A DNA stretch of 45,400 nucleotides, taken from NCBI GenBank assembly GCA_002269645.1, contig NIVC01000737.1, positions 1 to 45,400 on the forward strand, given 5' to 3'. A program made the translations under genes and the position numbers. The stretch comes from Macrostomum lignano. Its lineage: Eukaryota. A model generated the notes under the pieces. The model had not been told where the DNA came from, ran no database searches, and was given only the letters and a program-made list of their open reading frames with translations. Every line of letters starts with the position of its first letter. The first letter of the stretch is position 1. This document shows, piece by piece, positions 12,851 through 13,848 of this stretch.

Positions 12851-13848
12851 ATGACGACTGAAAAGTACGAGTGCCCTCTGTGTCTTCCTGGTTTAAGTAC
12901 CTATAGTGCTCGAGCTGATCGACTTCTTTTGCATGCAACTAAAAAGCATGCTTTAGACGCTAAAAGAGCAAGTTGCATAATTCAATATCTTCGTTGGTCC
13001 AGAAAGTCAGATGTAAAATTATGCGCGCTATGTGATCAGTTTGCTGTAAATTTGCGAGATCACTACGCTAAATGTCATGCGGGCGATTACAGGCGTCTTA
13101 ACTCCTTATTAACTGGACAACCAGCTATCAGGTTGGCGAGAAAACGTGCTCTGCGGCGATTCGGAGAACTGTACTGGTGTTTTATTGCCGACCAGCCTTT
13201 GCCACGGTATCCGGATTCAAGTTACGAGAACGAAAAACAGGGATTGCACGAGAGGTGAGTAATGTTATTGCCTATCCTGCTTTTCAAGATTTGATCAGAC
13301 ATGTAAACGGTTGTATAAACCTAAAAATATCTTTGTATATCCTCCACAGAGAACAAGAGTCGCGGGCTGGTAAACAGTCTTGTCTCCGAATCTATACAAA
13401 AGCCTCAAAACTTCTTCCGGCAAAAGTTACAGTTCAGTTAGCGGGTGAGAAGGGTTATGGACTGTTTTCTGATGAGAATATCAAGGCGAAGTCATTCGTC
13501 TGTTTCTATGGTGGAGCAGTTTTATCCAAAAAAGAAGGGGCGGCTAGGGAAGAAAAGCGATCTCGCGAAGGAGATTCGCCCGCATTCGCCTTTTTCTATT
13601 TTTATGGTTCAAAATCATTATGCGAAGACGCTACCCTCACTGATTCTGTAGGTCGCTATATTAATCATAGTCGACTGAACCCAAACTTGGTTCCTAGTGT
13701 CATATCACCTTGCAAAGACATTGGACGCCACACAAGCCGAATAGGATTTTTTGCATTACATAATATTCCCAAGGGAATTGAGTTGCTTTATGATTATGGT
13801 GAACGAGATGAAGAGTGTTTGCAAAAGTTTCCGTGGCTAAACTCTTAA
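12851..13848 (+). CDS. SETD8-like: Double C2H2-like zinc finger plus SETD8/PR-Set7 (KMT5A)-type SET methyltransferase; join(12851..13254,13350..13848), 300 aa
   Basis: A 95-nt phase-2 intron (AG|GTGAGT...CCACAG|A) joins the zinc-finger ORF (CPLC..H..KH; CALC..H..CH) in frame to the SET ORF. SET motifs are EKGYGL, FYGG, CEDAT, GRYINHS, ELLYDYGER and a terminal FPWLNS*. These are colinear with human SETD8 GKGRGV, EYHG, CVDAT, GRLINHS, ELLYDYGDR, HPWLKH*. Confidence 0.88.

What the first reader, a model, noticed from the sequence alone, without database searches (positions are those of the whole stretch)
12851..13848. SETD8-like domain with a zinc-finger N-terminus and an apparently intact monomethylase active site
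The canonical SETD8/PR-Set7 N-terminus is disordered with PIP degrons; here it is replaced by two C2H2-like fingers. The SAM-binding GxG and NHS motifs, the Tyr in FYGG, both Tyr of LLYDYG and the terminal PW are retained. The first Tyr of LLYDYG is the Phe/Tyr switch that favours monomethylation. The substrate-side segment differs (PAFAFFY versus GCYMYY; FPW versus HPW), so specificity may have shifted.
Basis: partly seen in the sequence, partly recalled or inferred. Interest (0 to 1): 0.75.

Follow-up and report, generated by a model that had tools for sequence, protein, structure and literature searches.

The report
Transposon-borne zinc-finger SETD8-like methyltransferase gene
This is an intact two-exon gene of the flatworm Macrostomum lignano that joins two zinc fingers to a SETD8-type lysine methyltransferase domain, and it is not the host's own SETD8 but a passenger gene that travels with a KDZ-type transposase, so a mobile element appears to carry its own chromatin-marking enzyme.

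Summary
Exons 12851-13254 and 13350-13848 splice (GT..AG, 95 nt) into a 300-aa protein identical to an RNA-seq-derived GenBank protein of Macrostomum lignano. Its C-terminal half is a SET domain whose best sequence, profile and fold matches are human SET8/KMT5A. All catalytic and cofactor residues are kept: GxG, Y188=Y245, NHS, Y282=Y334 switch, Y284=Y336, PW. The N-terminus carries eight Cys/His ligands that are invariant in five paralogues.

The gene lies directly downstream of, and on the same strand as, an intact 808-aa KDZ transposase. A second gene with the same double finger follows. A divergent second family in the same genome (38% and 47% identity) has the same genes. It is therefore a transposon accessory gene, not a SETD8 orthologue.

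It lacks the arginine anchor that SET8 needs to bind nucleosomes, and it lacks the PIP degron. Trees do not place it inside the canonical KMT5A clade, so H4K20 specificity is open.

Transposon-borne SET genes are already known (HarbingerS, MuDR, Helitron, red-algal Plavaka/Zisupton). This is a new variant: KMT5A-type, finger-fused, in an animal KDZ element. Element ends, activity and substrate remain untested.

The parts
12851..13254 (+). Exon 1 of the ZnF-SET gene (aa 1-134 plus two bases of codon 135): double zinc-finger module and linker
   Evidence: The spliced product is identical to the GenBank protein.
12872..12949 (+). Finger 1, C8-x2-C11-x16-H28-x4-H33
   Evidence: Ligands are invariant in 5 paralogues. 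The paralogues have the canonical x12 spacing. Pfam matches are sub-threshold.
13022..13078 (+). Finger 2, C58-x2-C61-x9-H71-x4-H76
   Evidence: Ligands are invariant in 5 paralogues.
13255..13349 (+). 95-nt intron (GTGAGT..CAG). If it is retained, an in-frame TGA at 13256-13258 ends a 135-aa finger-only protein.
   Evidence: ORF 12851-13258.
13350..13848 (+). Exon 2: N-flanking helix (aa 128-155 in the model), SET domain and C-flank ending FPWLNS, then the stop codon
   Evidence: Pfam SET. SETD8 is the best match by sequence and by fold. pLDDT is above 90 for aa 160-300.
9617..12128 (+). KDZ transposase gene: exons 9617-10952 and 11038-12128, 808 aa
   Evidence: The splice solution gives 808 aa. 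It is 100% identical to BOX15_Mlig001681g7. Pfam KDZ E 1.6e-31.
12082..12658 (+). Repeated post-gene segment X (12082-12237) plus Y (12238-12658), lying between the KDZ stop and the SET gene
   Evidence: Self-BLAST. X is 100% identical to 13914-14069 and 18998-19153. Y is 97% identical to 19154-19588.
13914..14069 (+). Second copy of X, 66 nt after the SET stop. Its Y continuation is displaced to 19154-19588 by the retrotransposon insertion.
14070..18872 (+). Non-LTR retrotransposon (ORF1, endonuclease, RT, RNase H) inserted in the SET 3' flank. It is private to this copy and is flanked by a 281-nt duplication (13789-14069 = 18873-19153).
   Evidence: Pfam; self-BLAST; absent from L001-L003; tail sequence.
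19937..20755 (+). ORF3, 272 aa: a second accessory gene with the same N-terminal double finger and no SET domain
   Evidence: A homologous ORF lies between KDZ and SET in L004. The exact protein is not in the public collection.
20898..21143 (+). Third, partial copy of Y, after ORF3
   Evidence: 98% identical to 12221-12470.
2208..6935 (+). GGCGCC(A/G)ATTT-containing 20-nt / 138-158-nt satellite upstream of the KDZ gene. It may belong to the element.
   Evidence: The same satellite, at 79% identity, lies upstream of the divergent KDZ element in L004.

Best explanation
The feature is an intact, transcribed accessory gene of a KDZ (Kyakuja-Dileera-Zisupton) superfamily DNA transposon, or of a very recently amplified transposon-derived unit, in Macrostomum lignano.

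Shown here:
- The gene sits about 720 nt downstream of an intact KDZ transposase, on the same strand.
- It is followed by a second gene that shares its N-terminal double zinc finger.
- The same gene set recurs in a second, strongly diverged family in the same genome.
- The protein is a KMT5A/SETD8-type SET domain with a complete cofactor and catalytic residue set.
- The domain is fused to a family-specific two-finger module in place of SETD8's disordered, PIP-degron-bearing N-terminus.
- The protein lacks SETD8's nucleosome arginine anchor.

Inferred mechanism:
- The fingers, rather than an acidic-patch anchor, bring the enzyme to particular DNA or chromatin. The element itself and the satellite array that accompanies it are the obvious candidates.
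- There the SET domain transfers one methyl group (Tyr at the Phe/Tyr switch) to a lysine: H4K20 or a shifted substrate.
- The element thereby sets its own chromatin state. This parallels the TET/JBP genes of fungal KDZ elements and the SET genes of HarbingerS and of red-algal Plavaka/Zisupton elements.

Whether the mark helps expression or transposition, or dampens the element, cannot be decided from sequence.
For: Identity and integrity:
- The 300-aa spliced ORF is identical to a transcript-derived GenBank protein.
- Pfam SET E 7.6e-16.
- SETD8 is the best match by sequence, by profile of the nearest relatives, by a family HMM (156 bits, against 99 for an ATX control) and by fold.
- Catalytic residues are conserved.
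- Among the named top relatives, three are canonical flatworm KMT5A orthologues; two of them are so named and the Hymenolepis protein clusters with them.

Transposon linkage:
- KDZ Pfam E 1.6e-31.
- KDZ and SET are adjacent on the same strand in the window and in L001 and L002.
- The same arrangement holds in the diverged family: L004 and L006-L009. There the SET protein is 38% identical and the KDZ 47% identical.
- Both families are multi-copy. Cluster members are recorded on roughly eight to nine contigs for each family's KDZ and on 4 to 9 for the SET proteins.
- KDZ and SET share a transcript-cluster prefix (Mlig001681, Mlig022522, Mlig004599). In that annotation the prefix marks the same transcriptional-unit cluster, and such units are often polycistronic.

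Shared finger module:
- The eight ligands are invariant in the SET proteins and in the ORF3 proteins of both families.
- A third ZnF-ZnF-SET protein comes from another sequencing run (P0006).

Loss of canonical targeting:
- There is no RR[ST]xR anchor and no PIP degron.
- The anchor's role is documented in PMC7893823.

Precedent:
- Transposon-borne SET and TET/JBP accessory genes are described in PMC12730594 and in bioRxiv 10.1101/2025.02.11.637652.
Against: - No terminal inverted repeats, target-site duplications or empty sites were found, so it is not shown that the SET gene lies inside a mobile unit.
- Copies within each family are almost identical over more than 10 kb, flanks included. The assembly is known to be redundant, so part of the copy number may be assembly or ploidy redundancy, and no dN/dS estimate could be obtained.
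- Several residues conserved in canonical KMT5A differ in this protein: R171Y, E187F, Y205R, Y214F, L238Y, P264S, and a 5-6 residue insert at 255-260. Activity is not guaranteed.
- The finger fold is not confirmed by Pfam thresholds or by structure prediction.
- Nothing here tests what DNA the fingers bind or which lysine is methylated.
- No KDZ-SET linkage was seen in 80 metagenomic loci that encode SET relatives. This was a weak test, because the contigs are short and many are probably bacterial.
Confidence: 0.6

Rival explanations
1. This is a domesticated locus. The KDZ-derived gene, the ZnF-SET gene and ORF3 are now host genes, for example acting on the neighbouring satellite or heterochromatin, and the unit no longer transposes. 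Its copies reflect polyploidy, segmental duplication and assembly redundancy.
For: - Copies are collinear and about 100% identical well beyond the genes, satellites included.
- The assembly has 180-312 Mb of duplicated blocks.
- The GenBank annotation excluded transcripts that overlap repeat annotations, yet it kept these genes.
- No TIRs or TSDs were found.
Against: - There are two strongly diverged families, each with an intact full-length transposase and roughly eight or more recorded contigs.
- One copy has a different upstream flank (L009) and another carries a 3.3-kb insertion (L006).
- Near-identity of many copies is what recent amplification predicts.
Confidence: 0.17
2. The enzyme is active but its substrate is not histone H4K20. 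It methylates a non-histone protein, such as the transposase itself or a host silencing or repair factor, or a different histone lysine.
For: - The substrate-binding strand is changed: PAFAFFY replaces GCYMYYF.
- H347 is replaced by Phe, D338 by Glu and K341 by Glu.
- The nucleosome arginine anchor is missing.
- The SET domain is equally distant, at about 30% identity, from KMT5A and from an ATX outgroup.
Against: - E259, Y245, Y334, Y336 and W349 equivalents and the overall SET8 fold are kept.
- F at the 347 position occurs in 20 of 89 relatives, and F at the 271 position in 17 of 89, so these changes lie within family variation.
Confidence: 0.15
3. The protein is a catalytically dead or decaying passenger. 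The SET domain serves only as a binding module, or the gene was captured and has no function.
For: - The window protein departs from otherwise well-conserved family positions: E187F next to the catalytic Tyr, R171Y inside GxG, Y205R, and an insert at 255-260.
- Inactive SET proteins with regulatory roles are known (the abstract of PMC12886896, listed).
Against: - The ORF is open and identical in four contigs.
- Every residue that is invariant in 89 relatives is kept.
- The catalytic set is also kept in two paralogues that are only about 30% identical. That conservation is hard to explain without selection on catalysis.
- The SET model is confident (pLDDT above 90) and superposes on SET8 at 2.0 Å.
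Confidence: 0.08

Closest known systems
KMT5A / SETD8 / PR-Set7 (H4K20 monomethyltransferase)
   Same: It is the best sequence, profile and fold match. The SET domain lies at the extreme C-terminus and ends in PWL-xx, with no post-SET cysteine cluster. An N-flanking helix is present. The GxG, Y245, NHS, Y334, Y336 and W349 equivalents are all kept.
   Different: - It has no PIP degron and no R188/R192 arginine anchor, and its N-terminus is a double zinc finger.
- The substrate strand and H347 are changed.
- It is about 25-32% identical to canonical orthologues and falls outside the canonical flatworm KMT5A clade.
- It is linked to a transposase and is multi-copy.
Fungal KDZ transposons carrying TET/JBP dioxygenase genes (Iyer et al. 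2014 as cited in PMC12730594; Kojima 2025, PMC12730594)
   Same: The transposase superfamily is the same (Pfam KDZ, CxC cluster). The logic is also the same: a DNA transposon carries an enzyme that edits an epigenetic mark, next to the transposase.
   Different: Here the passenger is a histone-type lysine methyltransferase, not a DNA-base dioxygenase. The host is an animal. There is an extra finger-only gene. Termini and TSDs are not defined here, whereas Zisupton has 8-bp and Kyakuja 7-bp TSDs.
Transposon-borne SET genes: HarbingerS and MuDR of Phytophthora, Helitron captures, and PAG2 (DNA methylase + SET) of red-algal Plavaka/Zisupton elements (PMC12730594; bioRxiv 10.1101/2025.02.11.637652)
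   Same: A SET-domain gene is carried as an accessory gene of a DNA transposon. In red algae a SET-containing accessory gene is reported with Zisupton elements.
   Different: Those are in oomycetes, algae and plants, and are not reported to be KMT5A-type or fused to C2H2-like fingers. I could not compare the sequences, because the Repbase entries are not available here.
SETMAR (primate SET + mariner transposase fusion)
   Same: It associates a SET methyltransferase with a DNA-transposase gene.
   Different: SETMAR is a host SET gene that captured a transposase domain into a single polypeptide at one locus. Here the SET gene is separate and sits beside an intact transposase in a multi-copy unit. 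This comparison rests on general knowledge and was not tested here.
VANDAL/VANC anti-silencing proteins of Arabidopsis Mutator-like elements
   Same: It is the conceptual model of an element-encoded, sequence-directed protein that changes the epigenetic state of its own copies (cited).
   Different: VANC is not a SET enzyme and acts through DNA hypomethylation. No sequence relationship is claimed.

Membership tests
KMT5A/SETD8 family | SET domain with the cofactor and catalytic motifs (GxG, Tyr245, NHS, ELxYDYG) | tested here: met
   Pfam SET E 7.6e-16. The residues map as G170/G172, Y188, N240-H241-S242 and Y282/Y284. They are invariant or nearly so in 89 relatives.
KMT5A/SETD8 family | SET domain at the extreme C-terminus ending in PWL-xx, with a C-flanking helix instead of a Cys-rich post-SET region | tested here: met
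   The protein ends FPWLNS. P296, W297 and L298 are shared by 82-85 of 89 relatives. Nearly all listed hits end one or two residues after the aligned PWL.
KMT5A/SETD8 family | Fold, including the N-flanking helix, matches SET8 better than other SET families | tested here: met
   The top 16 Foldseek PDB hits are human SET8, with target-normalised TM 0.78-0.90; for the best matches it is 0.87-0.90 with rmsd about 2.0 Å over 163 columns. MLL1, SETD2 and NSD rank lower. Model pLDDT is above 90 in the domain.
KMT5A/SETD8 family | Family-specific profile score above that of other SET families | tested here: met
   An HMM built from 86 non-TE relatives scores human SETD8 at 228 bits, the window protein at 156 and a plant ATX at 99. 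The same profile against PDB gives KMT5A 4e-67 and KMT2A 1.8e-31. Caveat: the profile members were chosen as this protein's own best hits.
KMT5A/SETD8 family | Phylogenetic placement inside the clade of canonical KMT5A orthologues | tested here: inconclusive
   NJ trees of the SET region show the canonical flatworm clade at 100% bootstrap, and it excludes the TE proteins. The three ZnF-SET proteins group with only 8.6% support. Identities are about 30% to all sequences, the ATX outgroup included. The tree method was crude and outgroup sampling was minimal.
KMT5A/SETD8 family | Arginine anchor (R188/R192, RR[ST]xR) that binds the nucleosome acidic patch | tested here: not met
   The anchor is conserved in 8 of 8 canonical orthologues but absent from the window protein, whose corresponding stretch reads HEREQESRAGKQ. 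Its functional role is described in PMC7893823.
KMT5A/SETD8 family | PIP-box degron in a disordered N-terminus | tested here: not met
   The regex finds LTDFY in human and ITDFF in the Varroa KMT5A, and nothing in the three ZnF-SET proteins. It also finds nothing in the flatworm canonical proteins, so this feature is not universal in the family.
KMT5A/SETD8 family | H4K20-specific monomethylation activity | not testable with these tools
   The only evidence is the Tyr at the Phe/Tyr switch (Y282=Y334). P0006 has Phe at that position.
Accessory gene of a KDZ-superfamily DNA transposon | Adjacent to an intact KDZ transposase gene, on the same strand | tested here: met
   This holds in the window and in L001, L002, L004 and L006-L009.
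Accessory gene of a KDZ-superfamily DNA transposon | Linkage conserved between diverged element families | tested here: met
   In the second family the KDZ is 47% identical and the SET protein 38% identical. It has the same order, strand, finger module, upstream satellite and post-gene repeat.
Accessory gene of a KDZ-superfamily DNA transposon | Located between the element's termini (TIRs or defined ends plus 7-8 bp TSDs) | tested here: inconclusive
   Copies are collinear far beyond the genes. One flank break lies at L004:3184 compared with L009, but no matching inverted repeat was found.
Accessory gene of a KDZ-superfamily DNA transposon | Co-expression with the transposase | not testable with these tools
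   The support is indirect. KDZ and SET share transcript-cluster prefixes in an RNA-seq-derived annotation in which transcriptional units are often polycistronic.
C2H2-type zinc finger | Cys-x2-Cys ... His-x3-5-His ligand set, conserved | tested here: met
   Eight ligands are invariant in five paralogues. The paralogues have the canonical C-x2-C-x12-H-x4-H spacing in finger 1, whereas the window protein has x16.
C2H2-type zinc finger | Significant match to a curated zinc-finger model, or a confident beta-beta-alpha fold | tested here: inconclusive
   The window protein matches only zf-Di19, at E 0.014. Paralogues match zf-Di19 at 2.1e-5, zf-C2H2 at 3e-4 and Zn_SUZ12 at 3.2e-6. All are below the gathering scores. 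AF2 pLDDT is 44-64 in the full-length model and 57 for the N-terminus alone.

The most novel reading that the evidence does not exclude
An animal DNA transposon encodes a sequence-targeted histone methyltransferase. The double finger, shared with a second element protein, recognises the element's own DNA or its accompanying GGCGCC satellite array. The KMT5A-derived SET domain then writes H4K20me1, or a new lysine mark, there without needing the nucleosome acidic patch. The element would thus program its own chromatin for expression, replication licensing or protection from piRNA/H3K9 silencing. That would be a self-directed 'writer' system in Metazoa, comparable to VANC in plants and TET/JBP in fungal KDZ elements.
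Probability: 0.25. Interest if true: 0.8.

Novelty: new variant of a known kind. Interest (0 to 1): 0.55.

Why it matters
Transposons that carry enzymes for editing epigenetic marks are rare. They are informative because they show which host silencing pathways matter enough to be countered or co-opted.

Known cases are mostly in fungi (TET/JBP in KDZ and other elements), oomycetes and algae (SET genes), and plants (VANC). A KMT5A-type writer fused to a DNA-binding-like module, conserved with its transposase across two diverged families, would extend this strategy to animals and to the H4K20 pathway. M. lignano is a transgenic-tractable, regenerating flatworm, which makes the idea testable there.

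It also offers a natural example of a SET8 catalytic core that has lost its nucleosome arginine anchor and gained a different targeting module. That bears on how SET8 specificity is built.

There is a practical consequence too. These genes are annotated as ordinary 'hypothetical' or 'SET domain-containing' host genes, and should not be mistaken for the flatworm's SETD8 orthologue in stem-cell or chromatin studies.

Tried and rejected
- **Word-indexed protein searches.** Searches with the protein, with a three-member alignment and with the transposase returned almost only M. lignano proteins.
- **Phylogeny.** A first Biopython bootstrap run timed out. My own NJ runs are unresolved because SET-domain distances are saturated.
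- **Selection test.** A dN/dS test was impossible. Copies within each family differ by 0-1 substitutions over several kb, and the families are too far apart from each other.
- **Element ends.** Comparing nine loci showed collinearity far beyond the genes. A flank break at L004:3184 compared with L009 gave no matching inverted repeat. The GGCGCC motif occurs only on the upstream side, and a 28-nt subterminal-looking repeat of L004 has no counterpart in the window.
- **N-terminal structure.** The N-terminus modelled alone with four sequences gave pLDDT 57, too low to search with.
- **Metagenome scan.** Eighty loci encoding SET relatives contained neither a KDZ gene nor the finger module.
- **Third family member.** The L005 contig carrying P0006 has no KDZ remnant in its 611 nt of upstream sequence.
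- **Literature.** The original SET8-H4 structure papers (PMC1151662) are not held. One search on 'HarbingerS' was wasted on the ordinary English word. No paper links KDZ elements to SET genes in animals within the searchable library.
- **Rejected idea.** P0171, a 1347-aa protein with both KDZ and SET domains, is not a third family or a natural fusion. It is an older merged gene model of the L004-type locus.
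Full report
**What is at 12851-13848**

The window is genomic DNA of the free-living flatworm Macrostomum lignano. An ATG at 12851 opens exon 1, which runs to 13254. A 95-nt GTGAGT..CAG intron follows (13255-13349), and exon 2 runs from 13350 to the stop codon at 13846-13848. The spliced CDS is 903 nt and encodes 300 aa. The product is 100% identical over its full length to NCBI 'hypothetical protein BOX15_Mlig001681g4'.

That GenBank annotation was produced from a genome-guided RNA-seq transcriptome (StringTie/TACO/TBONE), not ab initio (PMC5730564). 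If the intron is retained, an in-frame TGA at 13256-13258 would end a 135-aa finger-only protein.

**The SET half**

- Pfam SET matches aa 170-285 at E 7.6e-16.
- Against all PDB sequences the best matches are SETD8/KMT5A chains, E 4.4e-13 over aa 162-299. The alignment runs to the C-terminal PWL. EZH2 follows at 4e-11 and EHMT1 at 2e-9.
- A full HMMER scan of 1.84 billion representatives found 1906 relatives. Nearly all of the top 150 carry the SET domain at the extreme C-terminus and end just after PWL.
- A profile of the 89 nearest relatives hits KMT5A at 4e-67 (228 bits) and Cryptosporidium SET8 at 2e-48. The next family, KMT2A, scores only 1.8e-31.
- Named members of this neighbourhood include canonical flatworm [histone H4]-lysine(20) N-methyltransferases (Calicophoron, Schistosoma), a Hymenolepis protein that clusters with them, and a mite KMT5A.
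- An HMM built without the transposon-linked proteins scores human SETD8 at 228 bits, the window protein at 156 and a plant ATX control at 99. The profile members were selected as this protein's own best hits, which inflates its score somewhat.
- AlphaFold2 models aa 160-300 at pLDDT above 90. Foldseek's top 16 PDB hits are all human SET8, and the best of them reach target-normalised TM 0.87-0.90 with rmsd about 2.0 Å over 163 columns. This includes the N-flanking helix.

**Residues**

Mapping to the 352-aa human isoform gives these equivalences:

| Window protein | Human SET8 |
|---|---|
| G170 / G172 | G227 / G229 |
| Y188 | Y245 |
| R201 / E202 | R258 / E259 |
| N240 / H241 | N298 / H299 |
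| Y282 | Y334 (Phe/Tyr switch) |
| Y284 | Y336 |
| P296 / W297 | P348 / W349 |

- Y188, G190, D228, H241 and Y284 are invariant in 89 relatives.
PAFAFFY replaces GCYMYYF, and F295 replaces H347. However, Phe at those positions occurs in 17-20 of 89 relatives.
- The protein also departs from the family consensus at R171Y, E187F, Y205R, L238Y and P264S, and it has a 5-6 residue insert at 255-260.
- PR-Set7 is a strict monomethylase whose recognition of H4 depends on the R17, H18, R19 and R23 side chains (PMC3874154). Product specificity in SET enzymes is set by active-site Tyr/Phe residues (PMC7764450; see also the titles of PDB entries 3f9w and 3f9z).
- The Tyr at 282 is therefore consistent with a monomethylase, but it is one residue. 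The family member P0006 has Phe there.

**What canonical SETD8 has and this protein lacks**

Eight canonical orthologues, from human to choanoflagellate, all carry the RR[ST]xR motif (R188/R192). SET8 needs this motif to bind the nucleosome acidic patch and to methylate nucleosomal H4K20 (PMC7893823). The window protein has HEREQESRAGKQ in that stretch and no such motif. It also has no PIP-box.

In NJ trees the canonical flatworm KMT5As form a 100%-supported clade that excludes it. Its SET domain is about 30% identical to everything, including its own paralogues and an ATX outgroup. I therefore file it as a divergent member of the KMT5A-like family, based on profile, fold and terminal architecture. 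It is not an orthologue, and its substrate is open.

**The finger half**

The two patterns are C8-x2-C11-x16-H28-x4-H33 and C58-x2-C61-x9-H71-x4-H76. All eight ligands are invariant in five proteins that are only 20-39% identical:

- the window SET protein;
- its paralogue P0005;
- P0006, from an unrelated sequencing run;
- ORF3 of the window;
- an ORF3-like ORF in locus L004.

The paralogues have the canonical x12 spacing in finger 1, while the window protein has four extra residues. Curated models match only below threshold: zf-Di19, zf-C2H2 and Zn_SUZ12 in the paralogues, and zf-Di19 at E 0.014 in the window protein. Structure prediction of this part is not confident. 'Two C2H2-like fingers' is a fair description of a conserved ligand pattern. 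It is not a demonstrated fold.

**Context: the main finding**

- Directly upstream on the same strand lies an intact KDZ (Kyakuja-Dileera-Zisupton) transposase gene. Its exons are 9617-10952 and 11038-12128, it encodes 808 aa, and Pfam KDZ scores E 1.6e-31. It is identical to BOX15_Mlig001681g7.
- Downstream lies ORF3 (19937-20755, 272 aa), which has the same double finger but no SET domain.
- Other M. lignano contigs carry the same arrangement (L001-L003).
- Those contigs also show that the non-LTR retrotransposon at 14070-18872 is an insertion private to this copy. It sits 221 nt past the SET stop and is flanked by a 281-nt duplication (13789-14069 = 18873-19153). It does not touch the SET ORF.
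- A second, strongly diverged family in the same genome has the same parts. Its SET protein (P0005, PAA74960.1) is 38% identical and its KDZ 47% identical. It has KDZ, an ORF3-like finger ORF and ZnF-SET on one strand.
- The second family also has the same GGCGCC-containing satellite upstream, at 79% DNA identity.
- In both families a near-identical segment is repeated after the transposase stop and again after the SET stop. In the window these are X/Y at 12082, 13914/19154 and 20898. In L004 they are 8092-8391 and 12070-12369.
- Both families are multi-copy, with KDZ and SET proteins on up to nine recorded contigs per family.
- KDZ and SET share transcript-cluster prefixes. In that annotation a shared prefix indicates the same transcriptional-unit cluster, and such units are often trans-spliced polycistronic precursors. 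Co-transcription is thus an inference, not shown here.

**Limits**

- I could not find element termini or target-site duplications. Copies are collinear far beyond the genes, and the one flank break found (L004:3184 compared with L009) has no matching inverted repeat.
- Copies within a family are essentially identical, and the assembly is known to be redundant. Mobility is therefore plausible but unproven, and no selection test was possible.
- The argument for function rests on three things: the open frame, the retention of every family-invariant residue, and the conservation of the catalytic set in paralogues that share only about 30% identity.
- A scan of metagenome contigs for relatives found no further KDZ-SET pairs, but that test had little power.

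**Comparison with what is known**

Transposon-borne epigenetic enzymes are documented in several lineages (PMC12730594; bioRxiv 10.1101/2025.02.11.637652):

- TET/JBP genes in fungal KDZ and other DNA transposons;
- SET genes in HarbingerS and MuDR of Phytophthora, and in Helitrons;
- a DNA-methylase-plus-SET accessory gene (PAG2) in red-algal Plavaka elements and, in Bangiophyceae, in Zisupton elements.

I found no report of a KMT5A-type, finger-fused SET gene in an animal KDZ element. That search covers only open-access full text and not Repbase.

**Verdict**

- The 'SETD8-like with intact active site and zinc-finger N-terminus' reading is supported at the level of sequence and predicted fold.
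- The implied view that this is a modified host SETD8 is wrong. It is best explained as a transposon accessory gene.
- It is a new variant of a known kind and is of moderate interest.
- The more exciting reading, a self-targeted chromatin writer in an animal transposon, remains open and is directly testable in a tractable organism.

Noticed in passing
window 14070-18872, with 13789-14069 = 18873-19153: A full-length-looking non-LTR retrotransposon (ORF1, endonuclease, RT, RNase H) ends in an (AGTA/TAAG)-type tail. It is flanked by an unusually long, perfect 281-nt duplication that includes the last 60 nt of the SET CDS. It is absent from three other copies of the locus.
   Followed up: partly
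window 12082-12658, 13914-14069 + 19154-19588, 20898-21143; L004 8092-8391 = 12070-12369: Each gene of the unit (KDZ, SET, ORF3) is followed by the same 97-100% identical segment. In the window the first 47 nt of that segment repeat the end of the KDZ coding sequence. The diverged second family shows the same kind of post-gene repeat, but with an unrelated sequence. This may be a shared 3' UTR, poly(A) or intercistronic cassette, or the result of gene conversion.
   Followed up: partly
window 2208-6935 (inverted copies at 2106-2160); L004 360-2314: A 4.7-kb satellite of 20-nt units containing GGCGCC(A/G)ATTT, with higher-order periods of 138, 158 and 276, lies upstream of the KDZ gene. It is 79% identical between two element families whose proteins are only 38-47% identical. 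The satellite is thus better conserved than the genes.
   Followed up: partly
window 22097-28368: A large perfect palindrome has 1221-nt arms that are 100% complementary. It encloses about nine head-to-tail copies of a 387-bp satellite plus inverted copies. This could be an assembly artefact or a real fold-back structure.
   Followed up: no
window 108-623: An array of 26 copies of a 20-nt unit (TCCCTACAAAATGACACCTG) has degenerate 'AAAATGGCAC' copies around it. L004 has loosely similar 28-29-nt 'GTCCTCAAATGACC' repeats downstream of its SET gene, but no significant match was found.
   Followed up: partly
window 13255-13258: The 5' splice site creates an in-frame stop (AG|GTGA). Intron retention would therefore give a 135-aa protein made of the two fingers only, which might compete with or regulate the full-length enzyme.
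   Followed up: no
protein P0006 (locus L005, Logan run SRR19430222): A third ZnF-ZnF-SET protein is encoded without an intron on a short genomic-looking contig of unknown organism. It has Phe instead of Tyr at the Phe/Tyr switch (ELLFDYG). No KDZ remnant lies in the 611 nt upstream.
   Followed up: partly
protein P0004 (799 aa, representative library): The second-best HMMER hit consists of eight tandem copies of the C-terminal half of a SETD8-like SET domain. This is an odd repeat protein of unknown origin.
   Followed up: no
loci L006 (466-3798) and L009 (1-3205): Two copies of the second element family differ upstream of the KDZ gene. L006 has a 3.3-kb insertion. L009 has an unrelated flank that starts exactly at L004:3184 (shared sequence begins CTGTGACCAGAGTATTAAG). 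That point could be an element end or another insertion.
   Followed up: partly
window 28604-29263 (-), 31702-36071, 43965-44966: There is a reverse-transcriptase fragment (Pfam RVT_1, E 3e-5), long (ATCT)n, (TATC)n and (ATAG)n microsatellites, and 22-23-nt 'TAGACACAGATCCCC' arrays. The neighbourhood is almost entirely repeats.
   Followed up: no
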